Virus record (IMG/VR): IMGVR_UViG_3300031857_000005
Coordinates: 124,001 to 188,000 of that record
DNA length: 64,000 bases
Direction: 5' to 3' (one strand)
A program made the translations under genes and the position numbers. Of this stretch, positions 45,245-64,000 are shown in pieces. Each line of letters starts with the position of its first letter. Position 1 is the stretch's first letter. The notes below the pieces were generated by a model. That model did not search any database. It had not been told where the DNA came from and saw only the letters and a list, made by a program, of their open reading frames with translations.

Positions 45245-45247
45245 AAA

Positions 45248-47879: not shown

Positions 47880-48347
47880 TTAAATTATTTTTTTTATTAA
47901 ATCATTTATCCTTTTAAGGTTTTCTGTGATTTTTATATCATCATTATAATCTTTGTGACTTTTTACGTCTCTATTCATATTTGATAACCATCCCATGTCA
48001 TCAATTAATTCGTCAGTAATGTCATCAGGCATTACATCACTTACCGCTTGATTTGTATGAGTTCCGTTTCTCATTCCATCAATTGTTGTTGTTACCCAAT
48101 TATTCATATAATCACCACCATTTAAAATATATGGTGCATCTTCTTTATTACCGTCAAAATATTTAAACCAATTTTGAATTCTTTCTAACTGCTGAAATGT
48201 TACTTGTCCATTATCTCTTAAGAACATATTTCTTTTGTGTCCCTCAACAGTTGCATCAGAATTTGGTACTTGATCAAAACATTGTTGTAAGTACTGTGTA
48301 AGTTCTTTAGGTAATACTACTACCTGTCCGTATAATTCTTTATTCAC
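47880..48347 (-). CDS. Hypothetical protein
   Basis: ORF track. Confidence 0.7.
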   Translation of the reverse strand: MNKELYGQVVVLPKELTQYLQQCFDQVPNSDATVEGHKRNMFLRDNGQVTFQQLERIQNWFKYFDGNKEDAPYILNGGDYMNNWVTTTIDGMRNGTHTNQAVSDVMPDDITDELIDDMGWLSNMNRDVKSHKDYNDDIKITENLKRINDLIKKII

Positions 48348-49326: not shown

Positions 49327-49340
49327 AGGTATTTTTTACA

Positions 49341-49367
49341 ATAAATACTTTGATTTGTGGTATTTAT
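49341..49367. promoter_or_regulatory. Back-to-back pair of TATTTAT late-promoter-like motifs at a divergence point
   Basis: ATAAATA at 49341-49347 (14 nt before minus-strand start 49326) and TATTTAT at 49361-49367 (11 nt before plus-strand start 49379). Confidence 0.7.
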
Positions 49368-49378
49368 TTAGAAAAAAG

Positions 49379-51598
49379 ATGGCACAACAAAATATTAATC
49401 AATATGTATATTCTAAATTACGACTTAACATCGTAAATGAGTGTCAAGATATGTCTTTGGCGTCTGATGAGGTAAATTACAACCAAGAAGTTGTATTTTC
49501 ACCATTTCTTATTGCCCAAACATATGGAAATAAGTTACCAATAAACATAGATATATCGGATACGGATACCGTTCAAAATTTGAATTTATTCTATAAAGAT
49601 TATAATTTCAATAATATTTTTGTTTCTCAAAATTATTATAACCCTGAAAATAAAGATTTGTTATGTTTTTCATCATCAACAGCTTGTGATATAGGATTAA
49701 CGGGAATTGATAATGGGTTGGTAACATCAATGAATGGTGAAGAAATAAATTTCACAAATGGTTTATACGATAACTCATTAAAATTTGAAAGATTATATTT
49801 TGATAGAAGATTTAAGATGTTTCAAACTACTGGATATACTACTGATAATGTTAGATTTTCAGGTATAACCGACAGAACATTGTATGAAGTTGTTAGTAAG
49901 AATGGTCCAACAGGAAAATATCACGAACTATATGGGGGGTTCTATCAAGGATTTTATAGATTGTTTGGTTATGATTATAATATTTTTCCTGAAAGGATGA
50001 ATAAAGGATGGTCGGTTGAGATGTTGTTAAAACCGAGATTGATAGATGAATATTTTCCAAGTACAGGAGAAACTACTCTTAATGAAATTTATCCTGAAAA
50101 TGCTGAAATATTCTTTTATTTTGGTACAAGAGCTGAAAATAAATTTTATCACCACGCAGATGGTTCCCCAAATTGTTTTCCTGAATATAACAGAGTTACA
50201 AATGGGTTAGAAGAATGTGTGCAGACTTGTGCTTGTTGTAATCAACAAATCACAAATAGTAGATGTATATATGTTTACCCACCAAGATCAGAAAATAATC
50301 AACACGATCCTCATTTAAATTATGGATGTGATTTATGTAATGGAAATAAAGATAAAAAATTAACTTGTGGTTGTGACTGTGGTAAACAAGCTTGTGATTT
50401 GTGTGGGTGGGAATGTTTTACTCATCAGTGTGAAAACATAATTACGCCAACACCAACGCCAACACCTGATCCAACACCGACTCCTGATTGTAATAACCCC
50501 ATACCTGTCTGTACTCCAACTTGTACAACTTGCGATACTTGTGACGAATGTGAGAATTGCCCATCAACAGGATTTACTTCAGTTGAGAACACTTGCGAAT
50601 CTAATCCTTTATTTGACTCAATGTCGAATGCGATAGCAATTAAATTATGTGGTAGTAAAAACAATCCTCAAATTGGTGTTAAAATATTTAGATGGACTGG
50701 TAATTGTGAAACCACAGGAACTTGTGTTACAGGACAAACTTATGTTACGGGTTATACAATAGATGAATATTGTTCTCCTGATGGAATATATGATTATTGT
50801 GAAATAGTTAATCCTTTATATTTGTTAGAGGAACATTGGTTCCAAGTAGATGTTGTATGGGAAAGATATACTTGGTTAGATATATGTGATTTATGGTGGA
50901 GAGGTGGTCTTGGGGACATTACCAAATTTGAATACTTAGATTCGTTGGCTAACGATACTACAAAATTAATTAAACCCCCAATTACTCGTGGAACAGAAAT
51001 TGCGGAGAAAATAGAACTTGTTAATTTGGATCAATCTTGGTTAGATGACACCCAATTAAGAATGGGGAGATTAAAAATTTATGTTAATGGAAAAATATTC
51101 TTCAAAATAGAAAATATTGAGGAGATAATACCAAGAGCATTAAGTACGGATAAAGAAAGACAGTTAGGAGTTCCATTTAATATTTCTTGGGGTGGTGGAA
51201 CACAAGGATTAAGGGAAAATTTAACATTCTCGGCTTGTACTGCACTTGACGGAAAATATATACAAGACCCCGAATGTTTCTCAACAGAGTTATTAAACAC
51301 AACATCTTTAGCAGGATTACAAACAAATATATTATTGGAACAAAATTTTGCGGGGACTTTTGAGGGTGGTATATCACAATTTAGAATGTATGTAGAACCT
51401 TTATCGGCACCTGAAGTAAAACATAACTTCTTATTACTTAAAGATACTTTTGATATGTTAAACCCTGATTGTCCTGATTGTAGTACAATTGTTTGTTTAC
51501 CAAATGATTTCACATATGTTTTAGTTGAGTTGGATTTCTTAGTAACTCAAGATTTTTTCTACATTAGAACACAGAATAATGATTATTTCATAGTCTGA
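49379..51598 (+). CDS. Large structural protein with Cys-rich insert and (PT)n linker (start probably 49379)
   Basis: ORF track start 49142 overlaps the opposite gene; MAQQNINQY start has motif upstream; CACC, CGCDCG, PTPTPTPDPTPTP, CTTCDTCDECENC. Confidence 0.7.
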   Translation: MAQQNINQYVYSKLRLNIVNECQDMSLASDEVNYNQEVVFSPFLIAQTYGNKLPINIDISDTDTVQNLNLFYKDYNFNNIFVSQNYYNPENKDLLCFSSSTACDIGLTGIDNGLVTSMNGEEINFTNGLYDNSLKFERLYFDRRFKMFQTTGYTTDNVRFSGITDRTLYEVVSKNGPTGKYHELYGGFYQGFYRLFGYDYNIFPERMNKGWSVEMLLKPRLIDEYFPSTGETTLNEIYPENAEIFFYFGTRAENKFYHHADGSPNCFPEYNRVTNGLEECVQTCACCNQQITNSRCIYVYPPRSENNQHDPHLNYGCDLCNGNKDKKLTCGCDCGKQACDLCGWECFTHQCENIITPTPTPTPDPTPTPDCNNPIPVCTPTCTTCDTCDECENCPSTGFTSVENTCESNPLFDSMSNAIAIKLCGSKNNPQIGVKIFRWTGNCETTGTCVTGQTYVTGYTIDEYCSPDGIYDYCEIVNPLYLLEEHWFQVDVVWERYTWLDICDLWWRGGLGDITKFEYLDSLANDTTKLIKPPITRGTEIAEKIELVNLDQSWLDDTQLRMGRLKIYVNGKIFFKIENIEEIIPRALSTDKERQLGVPFNISWGGGTQGLRENLTFSACTALDGKYIQDPECFSTELLNTTSLAGLQTNILLEQNFAGTFEGGISQFRMYVEPLSAPEVKHNFLLLKDTFDMLNPDCPDCSTIVCLPNDFTYVLVELDFLVTQDFFYIRTQNNDYFIV

Positions 51599-51618: not shown

Positions 51619-54600
51619 ATGGCAAACATTAGAATTACCGATTTAGATTTAGTCCCATTTTCATCAATAACTGTTGATGACGTTTTTCCATTGGTAGATG
51701 TTAGTGGTAATACCACATATAAAATTAATTTAAATCAATTAAGTAATTATTTATCAGGATTTAATAACCGTTGGTACATTGAATCAGGTGAAACAATAAC
51801 CGTAAGAACAAATACTCAAAGTTTTATATATAACGATTTAATTGTTTATGGTAATTTAGTTTTGGAAAATAACTCAAAACTATTTGTTGTTAATGGGAAC
51901 ATTGAACTTATAAGTGGGGGAACAATTTCAAATGATGGGGGAGATATAATTTTAATTGATTTACCTGAATTTGATACCAAAGTTACTGATTTTACATATA
52001 ATGACAATGAATTTACTATATCAAATAATATTGGTAGTTCATATTCAGTTTCACTTAATGAAGTTACAGGTTTAACTGTAAACGGTAATTTTAGTGCAAC
52101 AACAATAAGTGCGTCTACTATTGATTTGTGTGGTACAAATGGAATATTATTTACCGATACCATATCAGGATGTTCCCCAATTAATATTTTAAGTTTTGCA
52201 ATTTTTCACGAAGGGTTAAGTGCCAATACAATTTCTGCAATAACATATCAAAATTTACCTGACAATGTTACTGGATTTTATTTACCATTAAGTGGAGGGA
52301 CAGTTACTGGATCAACAACATTTACTAATGGATTATTGTCAAGTACAATCTCTGCAACAACAATAAGTGGAGGTACTTTTTATGGTGATGGTAGTAACTT
52401 ACTTGGTAGTATAACTGGTGGAACTAATTTAGGTGACGGATTACCAATTTTTAGTAACACTCAAAATAAAAATTTAGAATTTAACTCAATTACTGGAGAC
52501 ACCCTTGATAAAATTTCAACTACTCTTAATTCAAACAAAATTGAAATTGGGATAAATGAACCTAATTTAGATATTTGGCCTTTAGTGGTAAAAGGAAGTA
52601 AGTTGTTAAATGGTGGTGTTTCATATATAAGCGGTTATACTTTTGAGGTAAGTCCTTTAGAATATATAATTGGAGAAACTATATATTCAATAACATCGTC
52701 ATCAACTGTTGTATTGAATTCGGGAGATAGTACATATGATAGGATTGATGTTATTATATCCGACGTTTTTGGGAATACATCTGTAATTCAAGGAACACCA
52801 TCCTTAAATCCCGAAAAACCAAATATAGATGAATTAACCCAACTTGAAATTACATTTATATTGGTACCAGCAAATAGTATTGAACCTGATATAACCACAC
52901 TAATATTATATAATAATAATTTGGGGACACCAACGGAATGGACATTTGGTTCGGTTGGTTCACAACCAACAAGAATAATTTCATCAGCAACTGAAGAAAC
53001 TTACAGTGGATCAACATCTATTAGAGTTAGTGGTGTTACAGGTGCATTTACAACATCTTTTAGATTAACTGGATTAACTACTGTTGACACAACAAATTAT
53101 TCTTCATTACAATTTGCAATAAGAAATTTATCCGCAAACACAACAACAACACAAATAAGATTCAGATTTTTAACATCCACAGGTACTCAAAATGGTAGTG
53201 CTGTTTTTATGAATGCCGCGGGTTCTTCAAACTTTGTCCAATATAATAATACTAACACATCATCATGGCAAGTAATATCAATACCTTTATGGAGATTTTA
53301 TCTAACTAATAATTTTGCACAAATTTTAGAAGTATCATTCAATAGTCCTAATGCAAGATATTATTTTGATTTAATCGAATTGTTAGAGGGTTATTCATCT
53401 TCCCCTCCTGTTAATTCTTGGACGGCAATAAAAGGTGATGGGACAACCACTATTACCGCACCAAACCCAAATGCTACTTTAACAATTTCAGGTGGAACAA
53501 ATATTAGTTCATCAATATCTGGTTCATCTACTGTTGTTCTAAACTTGGATAATAATATTTCACTTAATAGTGTTAGTGCAACAACTATAAGTGGGGGAAC
53601 ATTTTATGGTGATGGTAGTAATCTTACAGGAATTGGTGGTGGAGATAACTTTTTACCATTAAGTGGTGGTACGGTAACAGGTGATACTATTTTTACACAA
53701 AATATTACTGCGAATACCGTTAATAGTTTAAGGTTAGGTATTGGTGGTGGAAACATAAATTCTAATATTTCGTTGGGAACAAATTCACTCCAATCTAATA
53801 CTACAGGATTTGAAAACATTTCTTTTGGTAATCAATCACTCCAAAACAATACAACAGGTGTTAGAAATATTGCAATTGGTTCAAATACTTTACAAGCTAA
53901 CATAACAGGAAATTACAACGTATCATTGGGTAGATATTCACTCCGATGCAATACAACAGGTAGTAACAACGTATCATTGGGTAGATATTCACTCCGATGG
54001 AATACAACGGGTAGTAACAACGTATCATTGGGTGCGTGTTCACTCCTTTGTAACAGTACAGGTACTGCAAATATTGCGTTGGGTCAAAGTTCACTCCAAC
54101 GTAACACAACAGGTTACCGAAACGTATCATTAGGTAGTTATTCACTCTATTCTAACACAACAGGAACTAACAATGTATCGTTGGGTGCAAATTCACTCAT
54201 ATCCAATATCTCAGGATGTTTAAACGTGAGTATAGGTACAAATTCACTCCTATCTAACACAACAGGAGGTAGTAACATATCGATGGGTTTTCAATCACTC
54301 CGTAACAACACAACAGGAACTAACAACATATCGTTAGGTGGGTGTTCACTTTATTGTAACAGTATAGGATGTAACAACGTATCATTGGGTAGATATTCAC
54401 TCCAACGTAACACAACAGGAAATAATAACGTTGCGTTGGGTTACTCCTCACTCCGATGTAACACAACAGGATTATACAACGTATCGTTGGGTCAAAATTC
54501 ACTCCGATTAAACACAACAGGATGTAACAACGTATCGTTGGGATCAAGCTCACTCCAAAATAATACAACAGGTAATCACAACATATCATTGGGTTCAGGT

Positions 54601-56160
54601 TCACTCCTATCCAATATTTCAGGATGTTACAACGTATCGTTAGGTCAAAGTTCACTACTAAACAACACCACAGGATGTAACAACGTATCGTTGGGTAATT
54701 GCTCACTCCGAGGTAACACAACAGGATGTAACAACGTATCGTTAGGTTTGTGTTCACTCCGAGCAAACACTACAGGTAATGGAAATATTGCGTTAGGACA
54801 AGTTTCATTATTTAGTAATACAACTGGTTATCGTAATATTGGTTTAGGTGTAAGTTTAGTTGCAAATACCACAGGGTCTAATAATATAGCCCTTGGGGAT
54901 AATGCATTAGCCTTTAACACAACAGGAAATGGTAATATTGCATTGGGATCAAGATCTTTAAGAAGTAATACAACAGGGTTTTACAACGTCTCTATTGGTT
55001 GCGGTGCAATGTATTGTAGTACAACTAGTAATTTTAATACCGCAATAGGTTTTAGATCGTTATTTTGTAACACAACAGGTACTCGTAATGTTGGGATTGG
55101 TCAACAAACACTTTACGATAATACTACAGGTAATGATAATGTTGCGTTAGGGTATAGAATTTTAAGACGTAACACAACAGGATGTAACAACGTATCGTTA
55201 GGTTCTCTTTCACTATATGGTAATACAGTAGGAAATTACAACGTAGCGTTAGGACAATCTGCTTTACGTTGTAATACTTCAGGTACAACTAATGTTGGAA
55301 TTGGGAGGTGTTCTTTGTGTTTAAATACAACAGGTTCTTACAACGTAGCGTTGGGTCAAAATTCACTCCGATCAAACACAACAGGATGTCTTAATGTTGC
55401 GTTGGGATCATGTTCACTCCAAAACAACACAACAGGATGTTTTAATGTTGCTTTAGGTTTAAGTTCACTCCGATTAAACACAACAGGATGTAACAACGTA
55501 TCGTTGGGACAACTTTCGCTCTTTTCTAACACAACAGGAGCATACAACGTATCGTTGGGTACAGGTTCACTAAACACTAACACAACAGGATGTAACAACG
55601 TATCGTTGGGTAATCGTTCATTAAACTTTAACACAACAGGTTCTGACAACGTATCGTTGGGTAATCGTTCACTCCAATGTAATATTAATGGTGGATCAAA
55701 TGTATCAATAGGAAGGTATTCATTACAATGTAACACTTCGGGAACTTTAAATGTTTCTATAGGAGAAAGGTCAATGAGAAATAATACAACATCTAATTTT
55801 AACATTGCAATGGGTTATAACTCACTTTTTAGTAATTTATCAGGTAATACTAATATAAGTTTGGGTGTACAATCTTTATTTAGTAATAATGTTGGGGCGT
55901 GTAATATTGCAATAGGATTTAAAAGTGCTTGTATTAATACTTCAGGAAATACAAACGTTGTTATAGGATGTGAAGCACAAACGGGTGATTTTTCTAATTC
56001 GGTAATATTAGGTAATAGTGCCACTGCGGGTAATAATAATGAATTTGTGGTAGGTAGTTCAGGAACTCCTTTAGGAACAATAACAACCGAATCGTGCACA
56101 TCAAGTAAAACATGGCAGATAAGAGTCAATGGTAACTTATATAAATTACTATTGGCTTAA
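51619..56160 (+). CDS. Long tail fibre / adhesin with ~43 x 17-aa beta-roll repeats
   Basis: N-terminal MANIRITDL..DDVFPLVD..TYKI anchor-type motif; NVSLGxxSLxxNTTGxx repeats; C-terminal WQIRVNGNLYKLLL. Confidence 0.8.
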   Translation: MANIRITDLDLVPFSSITVDDVFPLVDVSGNTTYKINLNQLSNYLSGFNNRWYIESGETITVRTNTQSFIYNDLIVYGNLVLENNSKLFVVNGNIELISGGTISNDGGDIILIDLPEFDTKVTDFTYNDNEFTISNNIGSSYSVSLNEVTGLTVNGNFSATTISASTIDLCGTNGILFTDTISGCSPINILSFAIFHEGLSANTISAITYQNLPDNVTGFYLPLSGGTVTGSTTFTNGLLSSTISATTISGGTFYGDGSNLLGSITGGTNLGDGLPIFSNTQNKNLEFNSITGDTLDKISTTLNSNKIEIGINEPNLDIWPLVVKGSKLLNGGVSYISGYTFEVSPLEYIIGETIYSITSSSTVVLNSGDSTYDRIDVIISDVFGNTSVIQGTPSLNPEKPNIDELTQLEITFILVPANSIEPDITTLILYNNNLGTPTEWTFGSVGSQPTRIISSATEETYSGSTSIRVSGVTGAFTTSFRLTGLTTVDTTNYSSLQFAIRNLSANTTTTQIRFRFLTSTGTQNGSAVFMNAAGSSNFVQYNNTNTSSWQVISIPLWRFYLTNNFAQILEVSFNSPNARYYFDLIELLEGYSSSPPVNSWTAIKGDGTTTITAPNPNATLTISGGTNISSSISGSSTVVLNLDNNISLNSVSATTISGGTFYGDGSNLTGIGGGDNFLPLSGGTVTGDTIFTQNITANTVNSLRLGIGGGNINSNISLGTNSLQSNTTGFENISFGNQSLQNNTTGVRNIAIGSNTLQANITGNYNVSLGRYSLRCNTTGSNNVSLGRYSLRWNTTGSNNVSLGACSLLCNSTGTANIALGQSSLQRNTTGYRNVSLGSYSLYSNTTGTNNVSLGANSLISNISGCLNVSIGTNSLLSNTTGGSNISMGFQSLRNNTTGTNNISLGGCSLYCNSIGCNNVSLGRYSLQRNTTGNNNVALGYSSLRCNTTGLYNVSLGQNSLRLNTTGCNNVSLGSSSLQNNTTGNHNISLGSGSLLSNISGCYNVSLGQSSLLNNTTGCNNVSLGNCSLRGNTTGCNNVSLGLCSLRANTTGNGNIALGQVSLFSNTTGYRNIGLGVSLVANTTGSNNIALGDNALAFNTTGNGNIALGSRSLRSNTTGFYNVSIGCGAMYCSTTSNFNTAIGFRSLFCNTTGTRNVGIGQQTLYDNTTGNDNVALGYRILRRNTTGCNNVSLGSLSLYGNTVGNYNVALGQSALRCNTSGTTNVGIGRCSLCLNTTGSYNVALGQNSLRSNTTGCLNVALGSCSLQNNTTGCFNVALGLSSLRLNTTGCNNVSLGQLSLFSNTTGAYNVSLGTGSLNTNTTGCNNVSLGNRSLNFNTTGSDNVSLGNRSLQCNINGGSNVSIGRYSLQCNTSGTLNVSIGERSMRNNTTSNFNIAMGYNSLFSNLSGNTNISLGVQSLFSNNVGACNIAIGFKSACINTSGNTNVVIGCEAQTGDFSNSVILGNSATAGNNNEFVVGSSGTPLGTITTESCTSSKTWQIRVNGNLYKLLLA
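53760..55990 (+). repeat. 51-nt (17-aa) coding tandem repeat array, ~43 units
   Basis: For example, units at 53917 and 53968 differ at 2 of 51 nt. Confidence 0.92.
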
Positions 56161-56201: not shown

Positions 56202-57023
56202 ATGGTACAAAAAATTTTTTTTAACGCATCACTACCGAGAGCAGGATCAACATTACTGCAAAATATTCTAATGCAAAATCCTGATATTTATTCCACACCA
56301 ACTTCTGGTGTTATAGAATTATTATCAACCGCAAGAACATTATATTCTAATGGAGATGCGTTTAAGGCTCAAGATTCTGAAACTATGAAATCAGGATTTA
56401 AAAATTTTTGTAACAAAGGTTTTTTTGGGTTTTATGATGGTGTTACTAATAGACCTTATGTTATGGAAAAAAGTAGAGGTTGGCTTGGATACCAAGATTT
56501 TGTTGAATTTTTTATGGATGAAAAACCTAAAATAATTTGTATGGTTCGTGATTTGAGATCAATATTTTCATCAATGGAAAAAAATTATAGAAAAAATCCT
56601 GATAAAGATCCAAACATTGTTAATACTGTTGAATTAAAAAATATGACAACAACATCAAGGATAGATCATTACTCAATTTCTCCCCCAATCGGACCATCAT
56701 TAGAATGGTTATCGGAGACATTCCAAAGAAAACAAAATAAAGATATACTTTTTATCCGATTTGAGGATTTAACATCAAATCCTGATACTGAACTTAAAAA
56801 GATTTACAACTATTTAGAATTACCTTACTACCAACATGATTTTAATAATGTACAACAACTTACATTTGAGAATGATATAATCCATGGGATTTTTGGTGAT
56901 CACCAAATTAAATCTCAGGTAAAACCTGTTAAAGATGATTACGTTGATATATTAAGTCAAGAAAATTGTGATAGATTAAGACAACATTATGATTGGTTTT
57001 TTAGGACATTTAACTATTTATAA
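56202..57023 (+). CDS. PAPS-dependent sulfotransferase
   Basis: 5'-PSB loop SLPRAGSTLL; EKSR; 3'-PB MVRDLRSIFSS; IRFEDL..P...L.KIY.YL. Confidence 0.85.
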   Translation: MVQKIFFNASLPRAGSTLLQNILMQNPDIYSTPTSGVIELLSTARTLYSNGDAFKAQDSETMKSGFKNFCNKGFFGFYDGVTNRPYVMEKSRGWLGYQDFVEFFMDEKPKIICMVRDLRSIFSSMEKNYRKNPDKDPNIVNTVELKNMTTTSRIDHYSISPPIGPSLEWLSETFQRKQNKDILFIRFEDLTSNPDTELKKIYNYLELPYYQHDFNNVQQLTFENDIIHGIFGDHQIKSQVKPVKDDYVDILSQENCDRLRQHYDWFFRTFNYL

Positions 57024-57050
57024 TATATAAAAAATTAAAAATATAATAAA

Positions 57051-57293
57051 ATGGAAGAAAATATAACACAAGAGCAAATCCAAAACAGTATCAACGCCGC
57101 GTTTGACTCCGTTAATTTAATAAATCAAATGTTAACGTCAGAAAAAACTGATGAAAACAAAAATACTGTAAAAAGAAATTTTGAACATTTGGAAATAATG
57201 TTATCAAAAGATTGGTTTTTAACAAATTTAACTGAACAACAAAAAACGGATATTGATTCTTCAATTGAAGATGGTAAATTGTTTATTTTGTAA
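57051..57293 (+). CDS. Small hypothetical protein (tail-fibre-associated?)
   Basis: ORF track, 80 aa. Confidence 0.7.
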   Translation: MEENITQEQIQNSINAAFDSVNLINQMLTSEKTDENKNTVKRNFEHLEIMLSKDWFLTNLTEQQKTDIDSSIEDGKLFIL

Positions 57294-57316
57294 TACTATA
57301 AATTATATTTTTTCTT

Positions 57317-58195
57317 ATGGAAGAAAAATATTTGGTTTGGCACATTGAGGGTGGTTTAGGTAAAAATATTGCGGCAACGGCATTATTAAATTCATTAAAA
57401 GAAAAATACAATGATAGAAAAATTGTTGTAGTTGCATCTTATCCCGAAATATTTTTAAACTTACCATCGGTATATAGGGTATACAAATTAGGTTCTACTC
57501 AGTATTTTTATGATGATTATATTAAAGATAAAGATACTATAGTTTTTAAACATGAACCATATTATGAAACACAACATATATTGAAACAAAAACATTTGAT
57601 TTCAAATTGGTGTAACATAATGGGAATAGATTATAATTTTCAATTACCAACTTTAAATTTTAATTTTGTTCAACAAAGGAATGTACTTTCATGGGAAAGA
57701 AGTAAACCTATTTTGGTGATTCAAACAAATGGAGGACATCTTCAGAGTAATCAATCTTATTCTTGGACAAGAGATTTGCCTTATATGATAACTTCTCAAA
57801 TTGCAGAAAAATATAAAGAGACTCATCACATCATACAAGTATGTAAACCAAATTCAATAAAATTACCAAACGCAGAAATTATTGATTATCAAATTCAATC
57901 AATGGATTTGTTTGGATTACTTATTGCAAGTGATAAAAGAATTCTAATTGATTCTTGTTTGCAACACGCATCCGCCGCACTTAATTTACCATCTACTGTG
58001 TTTTGGATTGGTACGTCACCTAAAAACTTTGGTTATTCATTACATAATAATATTATTGCTAATCAACCAACCGATACCACAAAATTAATTGATGGTTATC
58101 TTTTTGACTATTCTTTTGACGGAATAAGTCACGAATGTCCTTATTATAGTTTGGAAGAAATGTTTGACATACCAAATATCTTGGAAAAGATATAA
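57317..58195 (+). CDS. GT9/heptosyltransferase-like glycosyltransferase (GT-B)
   Basis: HIEGGLGKNIAAT, ILVIQTNGG, LIDSCLQHASAALNLPSTVFW. Confidence 0.68.
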   Translation: MEEKYLVWHIEGGLGKNIAATALLNSLKEKYNDRKIVVVASYPEIFLNLPSVYRVYKLGSTQYFYDDYIKDKDTIVFKHEPYYETQHILKQKHLISNWCNIMGIDYNFQLPTLNFNFVQQRNVLSWERSKPILVIQTNGGHLQSNQSYSWTRDLPYMITSQIAEKYKETHHIIQVCKPNSIKLPNAEIIDYQIQSMDLFGLLIASDKRILIDSCLQHASAALNLPSTVFWIGTSPKNFGYSLHNNIIANQPTDTTKLIDGYLFDYSFDGISHECPYYSLEEMFDIPNILEKI

Positions 58196-58292: not shown

Positions 58293-61172
58293 ATGGGAAA
58301 AATAATTCTTAAAAGTAATGGTGTTGAGACACAAATAATCAACGTAACCGATTTTACCGCATTAAGTGGAGAATCAAATGTTTACGTTTTAGGTATTAAC
58401 GATAACGGAGATGTTTTAGAACAATTTAATCCTGATGGTTCAGTAATCAAATTTGATAACAGTGGTGATAAAATCACTCAAGGAGTTTATAACGATAATA
58501 CAGGAACTTTAACACTTACCGATTTAACAGGTGGAACTTTAACCGTTACAGGTTTTACAACAGGATCAACTGAAATATACATAACAGGTGGTACATATTC
58601 CGCAAATACTATAACTTTTACAAATAATACGGGAGGAACATTTAATGTTACAGGTATTACATCTGTATATGAAGTAGGTTCAGGAAGTAGTTCCGTCCAA
58701 TTAGTGGGTGTTAGTGGTTCGGCAATTGGGGATTATTCTGTAGTAAGTGGAGGATTTAATAATACAACTTTTGGTGACTGCTCAAGTATTGTCGGGGGTT
58801 CAAATAACCTAATAACTGGACCAACAGGAATTGTGAATTCAACGTATAACGGGATATATAGTGGGAGTACATTTAGTGGTTATTATGGAAGTTATTCACC
58901 ATCATCAACATTATCAGGTTTAGGAACTGGTGCAACATTCTCATTTTATTTTAACCCACCAGGAACATTAAGTAATGTTTATGTTAATAATAACGGTAAG
59001 AATTACATTAATAATGATACTGTAACAGTACTTGGAAATGTCTTTGGCGGAACAATAGGAACAGATAATGTTACATTCCAAATTGGAACAGTTAATGCTC
59101 CGTCTAATAGTTTTATTGGTAGTGGGGAATTTAATACAATTTCAGCATACTACGGTTGTTCTGTAATTGTCGGTGGTGAAAATAATAGAACTTACGATGG
59201 TTATGATTCTGTTAAAAATAACTTTATTGGTGGGGGATGTAATAATACTTCTAGTGGATACTTCTCAACGGTTGTTGCGGGTAGAAACAATTGTTCTTTT
59301 GGTGATTGTGCCTTTGTTGGTGGTGGTTGTGGAAACCGAGCATATAGTAGATCAACAATCGCTGGTGGTAGAAGAAATACCGCAGGTATATCAGGAGGAG
59401 TTAATTCTGTAAATATTTTGGGTTCTTACACAGGTACTGGAGTTTCTCAAGGAACATATAGTGTTTATACAAATAATGTTATAAGTTCAGGAATTGGTTT
59501 AAGTTTATTAATTACTTTTGATAATTCTGGTGTTACTACAAATACCCAAGTTGAAAATAATGGTAACTTATATAACACTTCCGATCAAGTTATTGTTCCA
59601 GGAAATTTATTTAATGGTGGAACATCACCATTAAATGATATTATTTATGAGATTACTGGTACATTTACAAATTCTTACGCATCAATTATTGGTGGTTGTG
59701 GAAACAGATCTATTGGTGAGTATTCAACCATAAGTGGTGGTTATCGTAATACCGCATCAGGATATGTATCAACAATAAGTGGTGGTTATTGTAATACCGC
59801 ATCATCACAATACACGGTAATTGCTGGTGGTTGTTGTAATGAATCAAGAAAAAATTCATCAACAGTAAGTGGTGGTAGAAGTAATACAGTTGATAACGAA
59901 TACGATACAATTGGTGGTGGATATAGAAATACAACATTAGTTAGTGGAAGTGCTTGTGGGGTATCAACAATAAGTGGTGGATACCTTAATACATCTGGAA
60001 ACTATTATACATTTAATGGTGGTGGTTGTAATAATAAAACTTTAGGGGAATACTCATCAATCGTTGGGGGTTGTAATAACCAAATTCTTTCAGGTTTTGT
60101 TGATGGTGTGAATTTTAATGCGGGTGATGCTTCCTCAATACCTAATAACACATACACCGTTAATCCTACAAATATTAGTGGTTATGGTGACGGACTTCAA
60201 ATAAGTTTTGATGTAAATAGTGGTGTAGTAAGTAATATTAGTATATTAAATCCTGGTATAAGATATGAAAGTGGGAATCAAGTTTTAGTTCTTGGGACTA
60301 GTATTGGTGGTTCATCGGCAAACGATTTAACATTTGATATATCAAATGTTAAATCATCAAATCATTCATTTATTGGTGGTGGTAGAGAAAATACAACATT
60401 AAGTGATTGTTCAACCATAAGTGGAGGTTATGAGAACACTGTCAGCGGAAATTACGGATCTATAGGTGGTGGAGCAAACAATACAATATCAACATATTCT
60501 GATTACGCAACAATCGGTGGAGGTGACGACAATACAATATTATCGGGTGAAGCACCAACAATATCAGGTGGTGAAAACAATACAGTTAGTGGTCGTTATT
60601 CAACCGTTGGGGGTGGTAATTACAATGTAATAGAATCAATAACATCAAGTAATTATACTCAATACGCATCAACAATTGGTGGAGGTTCTTGTAATACAAT
60701 TTCATCATATAGTGGGTACTATGATATGTATGGTAATACAATTGCTGGTGGTACTTGTAATACAACGGTATCTTCAGAATACAACGGACAAACCATTAGT
60801 GGGGGATATAGGAATATAACAATGTCTAAATTCTCAACAGTTGGCGGTGGGTGTAACAACACATCAAGTGGTGATTATTCATTTATTGGTGGTGGTAGAA
60901 GTAACACATCAAGTAGTAATTACTCTATGATTCTTGGTGGTAATTCTAACACGACAATTGGTATAAGAAGTGCGGTTGTTGGTGGACAAAACATTATTGC
61001 AACAGATGATGATATGGTTTATATGGCAAATGCCAATATTCAGTCATCCGGATATATTTATTTTGGAGATGTGAACACAGACGGATCTTGGAGAATGAGA
61101 ATATCTGGTACAACATTTATAATAGAAAAAAGAGTTGGTGGTTCTTGGGTAACATCAGGAACATTTGTATAA
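58293..61172 (+). CDS. Tail fibre / adhesin with S-x-I-x-GG-x-x-N repeats and inserted beta-domains
   Basis: Many STISGGYxNT units; C-terminal GDVNTDGSWRMRISGTTFIIEKRVGGSW. Confidence 0.78.
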   Translation: MGKIILKSNGVETQIINVTDFTALSGESNVYVLGINDNGDVLEQFNPDGSVIKFDNSGDKITQGVYNDNTGTLTLTDLTGGTLTVTGFTTGSTEIYITGGTYSANTITFTNNTGGTFNVTGITSVYEVGSGSSSVQLVGVSGSAIGDYSVVSGGFNNTTFGDCSSIVGGSNNLITGPTGIVNSTYNGIYSGSTFSGYYGSYSPSSTLSGLGTGATFSFYFNPPGTLSNVYVNNNGKNYINNDTVTVLGNVFGGTIGTDNVTFQIGTVNAPSNSFIGSGEFNTISAYYGCSVIVGGENNRTYDGYDSVKNNFIGGGCNNTSSGYFSTVVAGRNNCSFGDCAFVGGGCGNRAYSRSTIAGGRRNTAGISGGVNSVNILGSYTGTGVSQGTYSVYTNNVISSGIGLSLLITFDNSGVTTNTQVENNGNLYNTSDQVIVPGNLFNGGTSPLNDIIYEITGTFTNSYASIIGGCGNRSIGEYSTISGGYRNTASGYVSTISGGYCNTASSQYTVIAGGCCNESRKNSSTVSGGRSNTVDNEYDTIGGGYRNTTLVSGSACGVSTISGGYLNTSGNYYTFNGGGCNNKTLGEYSSIVGGCNNQILSGFVDGVNFNAGDASSIPNNTYTVNPTNISGYGDGLQISFDVNSGVVSNISILNPGIRYESGNQVLVLGTSIGGSSANDLTFDISNVKSSNHSFIGGGRENTTLSDCSTISGGYENTVSGNYGSIGGGANNTISTYSDYATIGGGDDNTILSGEAPTISGGENNTVSGRYSTVGGGNYNVIESITSSNYTQYASTIGGGSCNTISSYSGYYDMYGNTIAGGTCNTTVSSEYNGQTISGGYRNITMSKFSTVGGGCNNTSSGDYSFIGGGRSNTSSSNYSMILGGNSNTTIGIRSAVVGGQNIIATDDDMVYMANANIQSSGYIYFGDVNTDGSWRMRISGTTFIIEKRVGGSWVTSGTFV

Positions 61173-61194: not shown

Positions 61195-64000
61195 ATGGGA
61201 TTTATAAGTGATAGTATATCGGGAACAACAATAAGTGGTGGAACTTTTTATGGTGATGGATCGGGTCTAACTGATGTGTCATTAAACGATATTTTAACAG
61301 CATCAGCGATTCTTGGTGTAAATATAAACACGTCAAGTGATTACTTAGGTATTACAGCTATTGACACATTTGATGATGAATCATCAAATTATATAAGTTG
61401 GACAAATGGATCAAACCAAGGAACTGGTTTTAATCCTTGGGTTATATCAACACAACCAAATACAGGTGTTTTTTTAGGAAATCCGGCTTCAGATGGAATG
61501 GGAACAACTGGTATTGGGACAAACGCATTCGCTTTATTTGCAACTGACGGATCAAACTATGTATCAACATCAAGAACATTTACAACACCTTTAAGTGTCG
61601 GTGAAGTGTTTTCTTTTTATTGGGCAATTAATTTTGATGCAAATGGTGGAAATAAAGGTTTTGATTTAAAAGCTGGTGGTGTAACAATATTTAATGCAAA
61701 TAATAATAATACATCAACAATTACCTCAAATTTATCAGCACCATATAATGTTGTTGATGGTGGTTATGGGACAACACCAATGCTTGTAACATTAACAAGA
61801 GACTCGTCAACACAATATACAATAACAATAACATCAAGAAGTGGTGGTCCAACATATTCAGCACCAATAAATTCTTCATTAGCAATTAATGAATTAAGTT
61901 TTTATTGTGGAGCACAAAGTGATGGATCAGGACAAAGAAATTTATATTTTAATAAATTACAAATAACACAAAATGTAAGTTTAAATAAAGTTTCTGTTGA
62001 TGAATTAAAAATCGCATTAAACGTTGGTGATATATTATATTCGGCAGGAACTGGAACCGACTCAACTGTAAGAGTAGACAATGGAAATTTTGCAAATGGT
62101 AACTGCTCAATTGTTGCTGGAGGAAGTGGAAATATTAGTGATAGTCAATATTCAACAATCGGTGGTGGATGTAATAACACAATAAATAATTTTACAACAA
62201 ATTCTAACTATTATTCGGTAGTTGGGAATTTAATTGGTGGGGGTAATCGTAATACAATTGATTCTAATACGTTAAATGATGCCGATGTTGGTGGATCAGT
62301 AATTGGTGGTGGTTATGTAAATCAATTGATTTCACCTTTTTATGGTTTCAACACGGTTAATGGTGGGGTTTTAAATAGAACATTTTTTGATTATAGTACA
62401 ATTGGTGGTGGAGCAATCAATGTTAACTTAGATTCGTTTACAACAATCGGTGGTGGAGCATTTAATACAAACTCAAGTTATACATCAACAATCGGTGGTG
62501 GTAATAATAATACAATTGGAACTTTATCTTCTTATTATAATGATCCTATTATTGGTCAAACTATAGGTGGTGGATCTTGTAATACAATGTCATCTTATAG
62601 TGCTCAGTATTATAATGGTGGTAGTACAATTAGTGGTGGATATTGTAACACAACAGTTTCTTCATATTATGGAGGGCAAACTATATCAGGAGGGTTTAAT
62701 AATATAACATCAAGTGATTATGCAACAGTTGGTGGAGGGGTTAGAAACACATCAAGTGGTTATTATTCAACTGTAAGTGGTGGGATTAACAATACATCAA
62801 GTTGTGGTGGTTCATTTATTGGTGGTGGTTGTAACAACACATCAAGTTGTAATTATTCTACCGTAAGTGGAGGTTATAGAAATACATCAAGTTGTTGTAA
62901 TTCAACAATAGGTGGTGGTAGAAGTAACACAGTAAGTTCTTGTTATTCAACTGTTAGTGGGGGTCGTAACAACGTATCCGGAATTAGCGGAACTATATCA
63001 GGAATTTATGATCAAACATATAATGGAGGAACATTTAGTGGTTATTATGGGTCATATTCACCAACCTCAACATCTTCAGGGTTTGGTAATGGAGGAACAT
63101 TCTCATTTAATTTTAATACGGGAACATTGTCTAACGTTTATGTTAACACAATTGGTCAAAGTTATGTTCAAGGAGATACGTTATTATTTGACGGTACTTT
63201 ATTTGGTGGATCAAGTGGTACTGATGATGTGACAATTAAAATTAATGTGACATCAAGTGGTAATAATTCTACCGTAAGTGGAGGTTATTGTAATACATCA
63301 ATTGGTAGTAGTTCAACAGTAAGTGGTGGTAAAAGAAACACATCAAGTGGTAGTTATTCAACAATTGGAGGTGGTAATGTTAACACATCAAGTTGTTATT
63401 ACTCAACCGTTGGTGGTGGTAGAAATAACACGTCAAGCGATTATTGTTCAACCATTGGTGGTGGTTTTAATAATAAAATTAATCCAGCATCATCCGATAG
63501 TGGTACTATATACGCATCAACAATAGGAGGAGGATCTTGTAATACAATCGGAACATTATCGGCATATTATGATGTATATGGTGCAACAATAGGTGGGGGA
63601 ACTTGTAATACAGTTGGGACATTATCCTCTTATTGTGGTGTGTATAGCTCAACAATTGGTGGAGGTTCCTTTAATATAATATCATCCTACAGTGGATACT
63701 ATGAAATGTATGGTAATACAATAGCTGGTGGTACTTTTAATACAACGGTATCTTCAGAATACAACGGACAAACAATTGGTGGAGGTCGTGGTAATGTAAC
63801 AAGGTATAATTATTCAACTGTAAGTGGGGGTAGAACTAACACATCAAGTGGTTATTATTCAACAATTGGTGGTGGTATAAATAACACATTAATAAATGGT
63901 TGTTCGGCAATACTTGGAGGAATATGTAATACGTCACAACACGATTGTTCATTTATTGTTGGTAGTGGTATATGTAGTACTGCCGCAAACACAACACACG
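61195..64000 (+). CDS. Third tail fibre / adhesin (runs off window end)
   Basis: Manual translation MGFISDSISGTTISGGTFYGDGSGL...; lectin-like N-terminal domain then STIGGGxxN repeats; reading frame appears open to 64000 (not every codon checked). Confidence 0.78.
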   Translation, partial: MGFISDSISGTTISGGTFYGDGSGLTDVSLNDILTASAILGVNINTSSDYLGITAIDTFDDESSNYISWTNGSNQGTGFNPWVISTQPNTGVFLGNPASDGMGTTGIGTNAFALFATDGSNYVSTSRTFTTPLSVGEVFSFYWAINFDANGGNKGFDLKAGGVTIFNANNNNTSTITSNLSAPYNVVDGGYGTTPMLVTLTRDSSTQYTITITSRSGGPTYSAPINSSLAINELSFYCGAQSDGSGQRNLYFNKLQITQNVSLNKVSVDELKIALNVGDILYSAGTGTDSTVRVDNGNFANGNCSIVAGGSGNISDSQYSTIGGGCNNTINNFTTNSNYYSVVGNLIGGGNRNTIDSNTLNDADVGGSVIGGGYVNQLISPFYGFNTVNGGVLNRTFFDYSTIGGGAINVNLDSFTTIGGGAFNTNSSYTSTIGGGNNNTIGTLSSYYNDPIIGQTIGGGSCNTMSSYSAQYYNGGSTISGGYCNTTVSSYYGGQTISGGFNNITSSDYATVGGGVRNTSSGYYSTVSGGINNTSSCGGSFIGGGCNNTSSCNYSTVSGGYRNTSSCCNSTIGGGRSNTVSSCYSTVSGGRNNVSGISGTISGIYDQTYNGGTFSGYYGSYSPTSTSSGFGNGGTFSFNFNTGTLSNVYVNTIGQSYVQGDTLLFDGTLFGGSSGTDDVTIKINVTSSGNNSTVSGGYCNTSIGSSSTVSGGKRNTSSGSYSTIGGGNVNTSSCYYSTVGGGRNNTSSDYCSTIGGGFNNKINPASSDSGTIYASTIGGGSCNTIGTLSAYYDVYGATIGGGTCNTVGTLSSYCGVYSSTIGGGSFNIISSYSGYYEMYGNTIAGGTFNTTVSSEYNGQTIGGGRGNVTRYNYSTVSGGRTNTSSGYYSTIGGGINNTLINGCSAILGGICNTSQHDCSFIVGSGICSTAANTTH

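What the first reader, a model, noticed from the sequence alone, without database searches (positions are those of the whole stretch)
56202..58195. Sulfotransferase + small protein + GT9-like gene inserted between tail-fibre genes: candidate fibre-decoration cassette
Seen in sequence: three co-oriented genes sit between a 1513-aa and a 959-aa fibre gene. They encode a sulfotransferase with intact PAPS-binding motifs (LPRAGSTLL, VRD.RS), an 80-aa protein and a GT-B/GT9-like protein. Inference: they may glycosylate and sulfate the fibres or the glycan made by the 29-46 kb operon, giving a sulfated and methylated glycan coat that could tune adhesion or shield against proteases and grazers. No PAPS synthase is in this window.
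Basis: partly seen in the sequence, partly recalled or inferred. Interest (0 to 1): 0.72.

Follow-up and report, generated by a model that had tools for sequence, protein, structure and literature searches.

The report
Phage fibre-linked sulfation and glycosylation cassette
A 304-kb marine phage carries, right behind a giant adhesin-like tail fibre gene, a conserved gene set for a sulfotransferase, a sugar-transferase-like enzyme and (just outside the window) its own supply of the sulfate donor, which most likely makes a sulfated sugar coat for the fibre, although the target has not been shown.

Summary
The three genes exist as described. ORF1 is a PAPS-type sulfotransferase with both donor-binding motifs invariant. 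ORF2 is a conserved 80-aa protein of unknown role. ORF3 has no Pfam hit, but its model matches GT9 heptosyltransferases, including the protein-glycosylating TibC/Aah. Its GT9 catalytic Asp is replaced by a family-wide Lys.

The window lies in a complete 304-kb tailed jumbo phage. Ten kb downstream, outside the window, sit paralogues of ORF3 and the sulfotransferase. Next to them are an APS kinase, an NMNAT-like adenylyltransferase and a DUF2061 membrane protein.

In 60 related viral loci the usual order is giant 17-residue-repeat fibre, sulfotransferase, small protein, APS kinase, adenylyltransferase, DUF2061, ORF3. In more distant relatives this block lies between the fibre and the tail sheath. 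A cultured Pelagibacter podophage has the same fibre type followed directly by an ORF3 homologue.

So linkage to a YadA-like fibre is real, and the "missing" PAPS genes belong to the module. Fibre decoration is the best reading (about 0.45), but it is unproven. Modification of a host envelope glycan is a serious rival. No evidence ties the cassette to the 29-46 kb operon.

The parts
51619..56160 (+). Giant fibre (1513 aa). It has an N-terminal non-repeat part and about 45 tandem 17-residue repeats (consensus SLGxxSLxxNTTGxxNV). It is a YadA-like beta-roll and the proposed acceptor or partner of the cassette.
   Evidence: Repeat analysis. PHROG hits to virion structural and tail spike families, E values down to 5e-173. 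AF2 model of the last 500 aa has pLDDT 74.7 with one short strand per 17 residues. The best Foldseek hits are YadA-like heads of the trimeric autotransporter adhesins BpaC and BoaA. 40% identity to HTVC111P tail fibre gp52. A homologue lies upstream of the sulfotransferase in 25 of 31 relatives.
56202..57023 (+). Sulfotransferase ST1 (273 aa), PAPS-dependent, cytoplasmic.
   Evidence: Pfam PF13469 and PF00685 above cut-off. The 5'-PSB loop PRAGST and the 3'-PB motif RDxRxxxxS are invariant. The best solved relatives by profile are TPST1/2 (E 3e-8), then CurM ST and StaL. A 55%-identical paralogue, ST2, lies at genome 190948-191766.
57051..57293 (+). Conserved 80-aa acidic protein (sm80) that always follows the sulfotransferase in the closer relatives. 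Its role is unknown.
   Evidence: 17 distinct homologues (42-73% identity) found in the same position, 14 of them aligned, with invariant residues A17, F18, S20, V21, L23-N25, R42, N43, H46-E48, M50, K53, W55 and F56. No Pfam, PHROG or Atlas lead. Co-folding with ST and ORF3 gave no answer.
57317..58195 (+). ORF3a (292 aa), a GT-B, GT9-derived transferase. It keeps the C-terminal donor-site motif but has Lys16 where GT9 has the catalytic Asp.
   Evidence: AF2 model and Foldseek hits. hhalign places GLGK16 on the GT9 'LGD' motif. Lys16 is kept in 109 of 119 family representatives. Natural fusions exist to GT25 and FkbM methyltransferase domains, and one member passes the Pfam GT9 cut-off. A 51%-identical paralogue, ORF3b, lies at genome 190059-190934.
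58293..61172 (+). Fibre-like 959-aa protein with Gly/Ser/Thr/Asn-rich repeats. Found downstream of the cassette only in the nearest relatives.
   Evidence: Sequence. 43% identical over 500 aa to the next gene. Homologue present only in L008-L010. No Pfam, PHROG or phage-database match.
61195..64000 (+). Paralogous 966-aa fibre-like gene that runs off the window (ends at window-equivalent 64095). Beyond it lie, in order: GT8, a GT9-like gene, ORF3b, ST2, APS kinase, NMNAT-like adenylyltransferase, DUF2061, a 164-aa ORF with no family hit, a DUF285 protein, GlcNAc-transferase, GT25, a methyltransferase and HtrL. Together they span genome 188397-199917.
   Evidence: ORFs in L007. Pfam results. 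Paralogy.
49142..51598 (+). 818-aa Cys-rich protein at the head of the + strand block. It is co-conserved with the fibre in the nearest relatives. Function unknown.
   Evidence: Homologues lie upstream of the fibre in L008-L010. No family hit. 4.6% Cys.

Best explanation
The three genes are the front half of a split and duplicated sulfated-glycan tailoring module. Marine tailed phages carry this module inside their tail/host-recognition gene block, directly behind a giant YadA-like beta-roll fibre.

Shown: ST1 is a PAPS-type sulfotransferase. ORF3 is a GT9-derived GT-B transferase. The two form a conserved pair down to about 35% identity. The pair travels with an APS kinase, an NMNAT-like adenylyltransferase and a DUF2061 membrane hairpin, and the whole block sits next to the repeat fibre.

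Inferred, in four steps. (1) The adenylyltransferase makes APS from ATP and sulfate in place of a canonical ATP sulfurylase, and the APS kinase converts APS to PAPS, so the phage does not depend on host sulfate activation. (2) Late in infection, in the cytoplasm, ORF3 and the neighbouring GT8, GT9, GT25 and GlcNAc transferases put sugars on an acceptor. (3) ST1/ST2 sulfate that glycan. The conserved Lys at the GT9 base position may bind an anionic, possibly sulfated, substrate. (4) The acceptor is most likely the adjacent fibre, giving a sulfated, negatively charged glycan coat on the virion's adhesin. This would parallel TibC/Aah heptosylation of the repeat adhesins TibA and AIDA-I. The role of the 80-aa protein is unknown.
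For: Enzyme identities. Pair and module conservation: among 60 non-redundant ORF3 loci, a sulfotransferase lies within 5 kb in 53, an APS kinase in 47 and the adenylyltransferase in 46. The three loci with ample flanks but no sulfotransferase also lack the PAPS genes. The ST+ORF3 pair persists at about 35% identity in two Ca. Taylorbacteria contigs.

Fibre linkage: 25 of 31 informative loci have the repeat fibre within 4 kb upstream. In distant relatives the order is fibre, GT2, GT4, FkbM, 114-aa protein, ST, ORF3, APS kinase, adenylyltransferase, DUF2061, an 86-aa ORF with no family hit, tail sheath, then baseplate further on. In the 31.6-kb podophage HTVC111P, tail fibre gp52 is followed at once by ORF3 homologue gp53.

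Other support. ORF3's structural neighbours include the protein heptosyltransferases TibC, Aah and BAHTCr. ORF3 fusions to GT25 and FkbM domains place the family in glycan assembly. PAPS logic: the APS kinase scores 69 bits and carries the DGDELR, LVAPY and YEKPTEN motifs. The adenylyltransferase has GRYQPYHYGH and ISATGIR motifs. APS_kinase+CTP_transf_like fusion clusters exist in viruses, archaea and bacteria. NT+DUF2061 fusions exist. A DUF2061 gene sits with nodH, nodP and nodQ in Mesorhizobium nod loci. No canonical ATP sulfurylase is present in the phage genome.
Against: There is no direct evidence for the acceptor. The same fibre type occurs in cultured phages (Roseobacter CRP-1/7, P-SSM2/5, OM43 phage Venkman) that have no ORF3 or sulfotransferase hit, so the enzymes are not needed to build the fibre. 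The repeated N-T-T-G motif also occurs in CRP-1 gp37 and is therefore a fold feature, not evidence of glycosylation. The two cellular loci carry ST+ORF3 among housekeeping genes with no fibre. ORF3 lacks the GT9 catalytic Asp, so even glycosyl transfer is unproven. GT9, GT8 and GT25 are classically LPS enzymes, the module includes a membrane protein, and published work reads fibre-linked GTs in pelagimyophages as host O-chain modifiers. No ADP-heptose pathway gene (GmhA-type SIS) is in the genome, so the donor is unknown. Co-folding of ST, ORF3 and the 80-aa protein gave no answer.
Confidence: 0.45

Rival explanations
1. The module modifies a host envelope glycan (LPS core/O-chain or capsule) by adding sugars and sulfate. 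The aim would be to mask the receptor, either blocking superinfection by competing phages or stopping progeny from sticking to cell debris. It sits among fibre genes only because the host-recognition cluster is the plastic region of these genomes.
For: The closest structural relatives of ORF3 are LPS core heptosyltransferases. The neighbouring genes are LPS-type families: GT8, GT9, GT25 and HtrL_YibB. The module includes a membrane hairpin protein, DUF2061. The pelagimyophage study describes tail fibres mixed with many GTs in a hypervariable 'host recognition cluster' and favours host O-chain modification. ST+ORF3 occurs without any fibre in two cellular contigs. The fibre type exists without the enzymes.
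Against: The position is not merely somewhere in a plastic region. The order fibre then ST/ORF3 is kept across relatives down to about 55% ORF3 identity, on the same strand with short gaps, between fibre and sheath, which implies late co-expression with structural genes. A 31.6-kb podophage with little room for accessory genes keeps an ORF3 homologue whose start abuts the tail fibre stop. Close ORF3 relatives are almost absent from 185,579 species genomes (2 hits) but abundant in viral contigs, which is unusual for an LPS gene borrowed from hosts.
Confidence: 0.3
2. The enzymes assemble a free or lipid-linked sulfated oligosaccharide or polysaccharide that is not covalently attached to the fibre. 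Examples would be a virion-associated or secreted slime, or a ligand that the fibre's lectin-like N-terminal part binds. The product would be linked to the fibre functionally, not chemically.
For: The genome holds a very large glycan toolkit. It includes GDP-mannose 4,6-dehydratase, an epimerase/reductase, four FkbM methyltransferases, GT2 genes and a Fringe-like gene at 29-46 kb, and at least five more GT genes downstream. ORF3 fusions to GT25 and FkbM domains indicate multi-step glycan building.
Against: No polymerase, flippase or export genes were seen among the genes scanned. Not all genes were scanned, so this is weak evidence.
Confidence: 0.12
3. These are ordinary auxiliary metabolic genes for host sulfur assimilation (cysC-type) plus an unrelated small-molecule sulfotransferase, with no tie to the virion.
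For: Virome surveys routinely list adenylylsulfate kinase among sulfur-cycle auxiliary genes.
Against: No PAPS reductase or sulfite reductase partners were seen in the module. The PAPS genes occur only where the sulfotransferase is present. The module sits in the structural block next to GT genes.
Confidence: 0.05

Closest known systems
Bacterial autotransporter heptosyltransferases (BAHT: TibC, Aah, BAHTCr) acting on the repeat adhesins TibA and AIDA-I
   Same: GT-B/GT9-type fold: TibC chains give TM by query 0.56-0.65, and Aah and BAHTCr models also match. The enzyme is soluble and cytoplasmic. Its gene lies next to a very long beta-solenoid adhesin made of short tandem repeats rich in Ser and Thr.
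   Different: ORF3 is about 100 residues shorter than TibC/Aah (292 aa against 371-391 aa for the matched TibC chains and the Aah model) and lacks their N-terminal extension. The GT9 catalytic Asp is Lys. No ADP-heptose pathway is present. ORF3 is partnered with a sulfotransferase and PAPS genes, which BAHT systems do not have. The acceptor fibre is YadA-head-like, not an AIDA-type beta-helix. The statement that BAHT enzymes glycosylate Ser in the repeats rests on my knowledge of the literature.
LPS core heptosyltransferases WaaC/WaaF (CAZy GT9, Pfam PF01075)
   Same: Best overall structural match. The C-terminal motif DSxxQH...W.GT falls in the region that the GT9 HMM matches in family member P0331, and it resembles DSGLMH of WaaF.
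   Different: ORF3 itself has no PF01075 hit. It has Lys instead of the N-terminal 'GD' Asp. Its context is viral and fibre-linked.
Host recognition cluster of pelagimyophages and cyanomyophages (Zaragoza-Solas et al. 2020, PMC7029224)
   Same: A hypervariable island in the structural region that mixes tail fibres, YadA-domain proteins and many glycosyltransferases. The present locus is an instance of this in a 304-kb phage.
   Different: That paper does not mention sulfotransferases or sulfate (0 occurrences). It did not define the conserved ST-ORF3-PAPS unit, and it favoured host O-chain modification.
Rhizobial Nod-factor sulfation genes nodH (sulfotransferase) with nodP/nodQ (ATP sulfurylase and APS kinase)
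   Same: A dedicated PAPS supply is encoded next to a glycan sulfotransferase. A DUF2061 gene sits in the same nod locus in Mesorhizobium.
   Different: NodPQ is the canonical CysDN/CysC type. Here the canonical ATP sulfurylase is absent and an NMNAT-like adenylyltransferase takes its place. The acceptor there is a lipo-chitooligosaccharide.
Protein-tyrosine sulfotransferases (TPST1/2; bacterial RaxST)
   Same: Best solved sequence relatives of ST1 (E 3e-8), aligning over the 5'-PSB and 3'-PB motifs and a Lys that aligns with a Lys of TPST1.
   Different: The TPST catalytic Glu position (identified as Glu99 from memory) aligns with an invariant T-P-T in ST1. ST1 is therefore not a TPST family member, and tyrosine sulfation is only a remote possibility.
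Virion glycosylation in mycobacteriophages and in giant viruses (chlorovirus capsid, mimivirus fibrils)
   Same: Virus-encoded glycosyltransferases decorate the virus's own structural proteins. This is recalled from the literature and was not tested here.
   Different: To my knowledge, no sulfation and no virus-encoded PAPS pathway has been described for those systems.

Membership tests
PAPS-dependent sulfotransferase (Pfam PF13469 / PF00685) | Profile match above the curated cut-off | tested here: met
   56.7 bits (cut-off 27) and 53.5 bits (cut-off 22).
PAPS-dependent sulfotransferase (Pfam PF13469 / PF00685) | 5'-phosphosulfate-binding loop (P-x-x-G-[ST]-T) and 3'-phosphate-binding motif (R-D-x-R...S) | tested here: met
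   PRAGST at residues 12-17 and RDLRSIFSS at 116-124 are invariant in 12 sequences. They align with the same motifs of TPST1.
PAPS-dependent sulfotransferase (Pfam PF13469 / PF00685) | Sulfotransfer activity and acceptor identity | not testable with these tools
   Needs an enzyme assay.
Protein-tyrosine sulfotransferase (TPST/RaxST type) | Catalytic Glu following the 5'-PSB loop (Glu99 of TPST2, recalled from the literature) | tested here: not met
   In the profile alignment the TPST 'GEE' aligns with the invariant T32-P33-T34.
Glycosyltransferase family 9 (Pfam PF01075) | GT-B fold closest to heptosyltransferases | tested here: met
   Foldseek PDB top hits are 3tov, 1psw, WaaC and TibC (E 1e-9 to 1e-5; TM by query 0.52-0.70). 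Hits to Swiss-Prot models reach E 2e-11.
Glycosyltransferase family 9 (Pfam PF01075) | Profile match above the curated cut-off | tested here: not met
   No PF01075 hit at E <= 0.1 for ORF3. A distant family member, P0331, scores 22.9 against a cut-off of 22 over the C-terminal motif.
Glycosyltransferase family 9 (Pfam PF01075) | N-terminal 'G-D' catalytic Asp (Asp13 of WaaC, recalled from the literature) | tested here: not met
   hhalign aligns GLGK16 with ALGD16 of phage GT9 proteins. Lys is kept in 109 of 119 family representatives.
Glycosyltransferase family 9 (Pfam PF01075) | C-terminal nucleotide-sugar motif D-S-G-x-x-H...G-P | tested here: inconclusive
   D212-S213-x-x-Q216-H217, W230 and G239-Y240 are conserved family-wide and resemble DSGLMH of WaaF. 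No direct ORF3-to-GT9 alignment of this region was obtained, because hhalign aligned only residues 13-58.
Autotransporter heptosyltransferase (BAHT: TibC/Aah) | About 400-aa enzyme with an N-terminal extension, an iron-finger Cys cluster, dodecamer assembly and ADP-heptose as donor | tested here: inconclusive
   The fold matches. ORF3 is only 292 aa, has no four-Cys cluster among its conserved residues, and the genome has no GmhA-type gene. Oligomeric state and donor were not testable.
APS kinase (Pfam PF01583), encoded outside the window at L007 7775-8233 | Profile match, P-loop, and the DGDxxR, (I/V)(S/A)PY and YExP motifs | tested here: met
   69.2 bits against a cut-off of 21.1. GQPGAGKT, DGDELR, LVAPY and YEKPTEN are in the sequence. 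The motif definitions are recalled from the literature.
ATP sulfurylase (Pfam PF01747) | Profile match anywhere in the genome | tested here: not met
   No match in the 304-kb genome. The step is proposed for the NMNAT-like adenylyltransferase on context only.
YadA-like head / trimeric beta-roll fibre | Short tandem repeats forming a beta-roll similar to trimeric autotransporter adhesin heads | tested here: met
   17-residue repeats. The model has one strand per repeat. Foldseek probability is 1.00 to the BpaC and BoaA heads, but global TM is low because the monomer model is elongated. Trimer state was not tested.

The most novel reading that the evidence does not exclude
Marine phages sulfate their own adhesin fibres. 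In this reading the module is a self-sufficient virion-sulfation system with three parts. (i) An NMNAT-like adenylyltransferase, often anchored by or fused to DUF2061, acts as a non-canonical ATP sulfurylase and with a minimal APS kinase forms a new type of PAPS synthase, also found fused in archaea and bacteria. (ii) A GT9 derivative carries Lys for the catalytic Asp and works on, or with, a sulfated sugar. (iii) The product is a polyanionic glycan coat on a YadA-like tail fibre that tunes adsorption in seawater.
Probability: 0.2. Interest if true: 0.85.

Novelty: new variant of a known kind. Interest (0 to 1): 0.62.

Why it matters
Published work states that the role of phage sulfotransferases is unclear (PMC10580990). 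It reads the glycosyltransferases found among marine myophage tail fibres as host-surface modifiers, without evidence (PMC7029224).

This analysis defines a discrete and abundant unit: more than 2,000 ORF3 and 1,500 sulfotransferase cluster representatives in metagenomes. The unit joins a sulfotransferase, a GT9-derived transferase and its own PAPS supply to one fibre family, in phages ranging from 31 kb to 304 kb.

If the fibre is the acceptor, this would to my knowledge be the first sulfated phage virion, and a new way to tune host recognition in the ocean's most abundant viruses. Separately, the APS kinase/adenylyltransferase/DUF2061 triad gives a testable candidate for a non-canonical sulfate-activation enzyme.

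Tried and rejected
1. Co-folding of ST, ORF3 and the 80-aa protein scored 0.00. The tool's verdict was 'no answer', so this counts neither for nor against binding.

2. The promoter and terminator scan of 48.5-64 kb found no excess over shuffled sequence and no convincing terminator between the genes. It is uninformative except that it does not contradict co-transcription.

3. A sequence search of solved structures with the ORF3 profile gave 0 hits. Only fold comparison worked.

4. tblastn of the fibre's N-terminal 680 aa and of the 959-aa protein against cultured phages found no match.

5. The Atlas search for the 80-aa protein returned only viral hypothetical proteins. It is not homologous to the 114-aa protein that precedes the sulfotransferase in distant relatives.

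6. I rejected the idea that the 90 N-x-S/T sequons mark N-glycosylation sites, because the same motif and 17-residue spacing occur in CRP-1 gp37, a phage lacking both enzymes.

7. I rejected the idea that the adenylyltransferase makes ADP-sugar for ORF3 (an RfaE-like role). It tracks the sulfotransferase and APS kinase, not ORF3: it is absent from the ORF3-only loci and from HTVC111P. It is also fused to APS kinase in other lineages.

8. I rejected filing ST1 as a TPST, because the catalytic Glu is not conserved.

9. A scan of 185,579 species genomes for ORF3 relatives gave only two hits. The scan uses close-relative patterns, so distant cellular relatives may have been missed.
Full report
THE OBSERVATION

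The window contains three co-oriented ORFs at 56202-57023 (273 aa), 57051-57293 (80 aa) and 57317-58195 (292 aa). They lie between a 1513-aa ORF and a 959-aa ORF, with gaps of 23-97 bp.

The first ORF is a sulfotransferase by Pfam: Sulfotransfer_3 at 56.7 bits and Sulfotransfer_1 at 53.5 bits.

The 80-aa ORF has no family, but it is conserved in the same position in relatives.

The third ORF has no Pfam GT9 hit. An AlphaFold2 model built on 14 homologues (pLDDT 81.7, pTM 0.83) finds GT9 heptosyltransferases as its best matches in the PDB and in Swiss-Prot models. These include 3tov, WaaF, WaaC and the protein heptosyltransferases TibC and Aah.

THE GENOME

The window is bases 124001-188000 of a single 304,365-bp contig with 31% G+C and 24 tRNA genes plus a tmRNA. 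The tools describe it as a virus record that CheckV rates complete.

Terminase, portal and major head protein genes lie at 6.4-16.2 kb of the window, and a sheath-like gene lies about 25 kb past the window. It is therefore a tailed jumbo phage from seawater-type metagenomes.

The minus-strand block at 29-46 kb is indeed a glycan operon. It contains GDP-mannose 4,6-dehydratase, an epimerase/reductase, four FkbM methyltransferases, GT2 genes and a Fringe-like gene, mixed with PhoH and dUTPase.

WHAT LIES JUST OUTSIDE THE WINDOW

Reading on from the 959-aa gene (locus L007) gives the following order: a paralogous 966-aa fibre-like gene, GT8, a weak GT9, a 295-aa paralogue of ORF3 (51% identity), a second sulfotransferase (55% identity), an APS kinase, a CTP_transf_like adenylyltransferase and a DUF2061 protein. 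Then come a 164-aa ORF with no family hit, a DUF285 protein, a GlcNAc-transferase, GT25, a methyltransferase and HtrL.

The genome has a bona fide APS kinase with its P-loop and the DGDELR, LVAPY and YEKPTEN motifs. It has no canonical ATP sulfurylase.

SYNTENY

Both ORF3 and the sulfotransferase have thousands of relatives in marine metagenomes, often on contigs of 100-300 kb. In three contexts fetched by exact protein and 80 IMG/VR loci, the recurrent order is: giant repeat protein, sulfotransferase, 80-aa protein, APS kinase, adenylyltransferase, DUF2061, ORF3.

Counting 60 non-redundant loci gives these figures:
- A sulfotransferase lies within 5 kb of ORF3 in 53.
- An APS kinase lies within 5 kb in 47, and the adenylyltransferase in 46.
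- Of 31 loci with enough upstream sequence, 25 have a homologue of the 1513-aa protein within 4 kb upstream of the sulfotransferase.
- The conserved part of that protein is the repeat region and the C-terminus.

In a more distant group the order is fibre (2174 aa), GT2-like, GT4, FkbM methyltransferase, a 114-aa protein, sulfotransferase, ORF3, APS kinase, adenylyltransferase, DUF2061 and an 86-aa ORF with no family hit, then the tail sheath, with a baseplate protein further on. The module therefore sits inside the tail gene block.

In the present genome the module has been duplicated and split. The first copy, which is the finding, kept ST, the small protein and ORF3. The second copy kept ORF3, ST and the PAPS genes.

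THE FIBRE

The 1513-aa protein has about 45 tandem 17-residue repeats with consensus SLGxxSLxxNTTGxxNV. It hits PHROGs annotated as virion structural protein and tail spike.

A model of its last 500 residues shows one short strand per repeat. Its best structural matches are YadA-like head domains of the trimeric autotransporter adhesins BpaC and BoaA, at probability 1.00. Global TM is low because the monomer model is an extended rod.

The same repeat family is found in the annotated tail fibre or tail spike proteins of Pelagibacter phages HTVC111P/112P, Prochlorococcus phages P-SSM2/5, Roseobacter phages CRP-1/7 and an OM43 phage.

In the 31.6-kb podophage HTVC111P the tail fibre gene gp52 is followed at once by gp53, an ORF3 homologue with 27% identity. 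There is no sulfotransferase there. This is an independent instance of the fibre-ORF3 pairing in a very small genome.

Most cultured phages with this fibre type have neither enzyme, so the cassette is an optional accessory. The N-T-T-G motif is a feature of the fold and not a mark of modification.

ORF3

The ORF3 family has 943 representatives at 50% clustering. Its close relatives are nearly confined to viruses: only two hits came from 185,579 species genomes.

The family's hallmark residues are G12-G13-x-G15-K16, T21, W98, R152, D212-S213-x-x-Q216-H217, W230, G239-Y240, H243 and N245.

Profile comparison with GT9 proteins from related phages aligns GLGK16 with the GT9 'LGD' motif. The Asp that serves as catalytic base in WaaC (from the literature) is therefore a conserved Lys here. 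The C-terminal DSxxQH region resembles the donor-binding DSGxxH of GT9. In one distant member that region passes the Pfam GT9 cut-off.

Natural fusions join ORF3 to GT25 or FkbM methyltransferase domains, which places it in stepwise glycan assembly.

I therefore call ORF3 a GT9-derived GT-B transferase and not a GT9 member. Its chemistry and donor are unknown, and the genome lacks a GmhA-type gene for ADP-heptose.

THE SULFOTRANSFERASE

By profile, the nearest solved proteins are the tyrosylprotein sulfotransferases TPST1/2 (E 3e-8), followed by CurM ST and StaL. The similarity is mainly in the PAPS-binding elements. The TPST catalytic Glu position is occupied by an invariant T-P-T. The acceptor therefore cannot be read from the sequence.

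The ST-ORF3 pairing is the deepest conserved feature. It persists at about 35% identity in two Candidatus Taylorbacteria contigs, where two ORF3 copies and one sulfotransferase sit among housekeeping genes (G6PD, Ddl, UvrC, GatB) with no fibre.

PAPS SUPPLY

The adenylyltransferase resembles NadM-type NMN adenylyltransferases and has the GRYQPYHYGH and ISATGIR motifs.

Several lines tie it to the sulfation pathway:
- It occurs only where the sulfotransferase and APS kinase occur.
- It is fused to DUF2061 in some relatives.
- It is fused to APS kinase in clusters from viruses, archaea and bacteria in the ESM Atlas. One of these is automatically named sulfate adenylyltransferase/APS kinase.
- JGI labels many homologues 'adenylylsulfate kinase'.
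- A DUF2061 gene is also part of the nodH/nodP/nodQ sulfation locus of Mesorhizobium.

I infer, without proof, that this protein supplies APS in place of a canonical ATP sulfurylase.

MECHANISM AND RIVALS

Firmly supported: a self-supplied sulfation plus glycosyl-transfer module that is physically and evolutionarily tied to a YadA-like fibre within the tail block.

Inferred: the fibre is the acceptor. Three things favour this:
- The position-specific linkage in both myophage-type contigs and a podophage.
- The likely late co-expression with the structural genes.
- The structural kinship with enzymes that glycosylate repeat adhesins.

Four things count against it:
- There is no direct evidence.
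- The fibre exists without the cassette.
- ST+ORF3 occurs in cells without a fibre.
- The neighbouring GT families are of the LPS type, and there is a membrane component.

The main rival is modification of a host envelope glycan, as proposed for GTs in the pelagimyophage host recognition cluster. I give fibre decoration about 0.45, host glycan modification about 0.3, a non-covalent sulfated glycan product about 0.12, and plain sulfur-assimilation auxiliary genes about 0.05.

I found nothing that ties the cassette to the 29-46 kb operon specifically.

NOVELTY

Glycosyltransferases among marine myophage tail fibres are known. Phage sulfotransferases have been noted but not explained. Iyer et al. 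predicted bacterial operons in which sulfotransferases and PAPS synthetases act on tail-collar or collagen-like proteins.

Four things are new here: the definition of the conserved ST/ORF3/PAPS unit, its fixed position behind one fibre family, the Lys-for-Asp GT9 derivative, and the candidate non-canonical sulfate-activating enzyme. I rate this a new variant of a known kind, with interest 0.62.

Noticed in passing
outside the window: L007 7775-9118 (genome 191775-193118): The APS kinase, NMNAT-like adenylyltransferase and DUF2061 triad may be a non-canonical PAPS synthase. APS_kinase+CTP_transf_like fusions occur in viral, archaeal and bacterial clusters, and a DUF2061 gene sits in rhizobial nodH/nodPQ loci.
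   Followed up: partly
L094 1806-4477 and L095 7117-9704 (Candidatus Taylorbacteria MAG contigs): Two tandem ORF3 homologues plus a sulfotransferase (about 35% identity) lie among housekeeping genes (G6PD, pyrophosphatase, LexA, Ddl, UvrC, GatB). These were the only cellular hits in 185,579 species genomes.
   Followed up: partly
window 29400-46465, minus strand: A large glycan operon: GDP-mannose 4,6-dehydratase, an epimerase/reductase, four FkbM methyltransferases, two GT2 genes and a Fringe-like GT, interleaved with PhoH, dUTPase and a PolB-type exonuclease. Several genes of 200-260 aa have no family.
   Followed up: partly
genome 102951-120580 (upstream of the window): An array of 24 tRNA genes, one with an odd anticodon call, and a tmRNA gene with tag peptide EKEQTLIIRG.
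   Followed up: no
window 47187-47591, minus strand: A 134-aa protein with a WYL domain (E 4e-5) lies between the glycan operon and the fibre block.
   Followed up: no
window 49142-51598: An 818-aa protein with 4.6% Cys and no Pfam or PHROG hit heads the + strand fibre block. It is conserved upstream of the fibre in the nearest relatives. Its first 185 bases overlap a 328-aa minus-strand ORF (48340-49326).
   Followed up: no
outside the window: L007 9695-11632: A 645-aa protein with four DUF285 repeats (E 2e-106) and a weak PKD hit lies downstream of the PAPS genes. It may be another surface or fibre-type protein.
   Followed up: no
genome 259199-264793: Further paralogues of the 959/966-aa fibre-like proteins (33-42% identity) lie about 75 kb downstream.
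   Followed up: no
window 14300-16177: The major head protein is 625 aa. The PHROG match covers only residues 344-602, so there is a long N-terminal extension of unknown nature.
   Followed up: no
ORF3, window 57317-58195, residues 256-276: The segment KLIDGYLFDYSFDGISHECPY carries invariant residues (Y261, Y265, G269, E273-C274-P275) yet is modelled with pLDDT below 50. It may be a substrate-binding or metal-binding loop.
   Followed up: no
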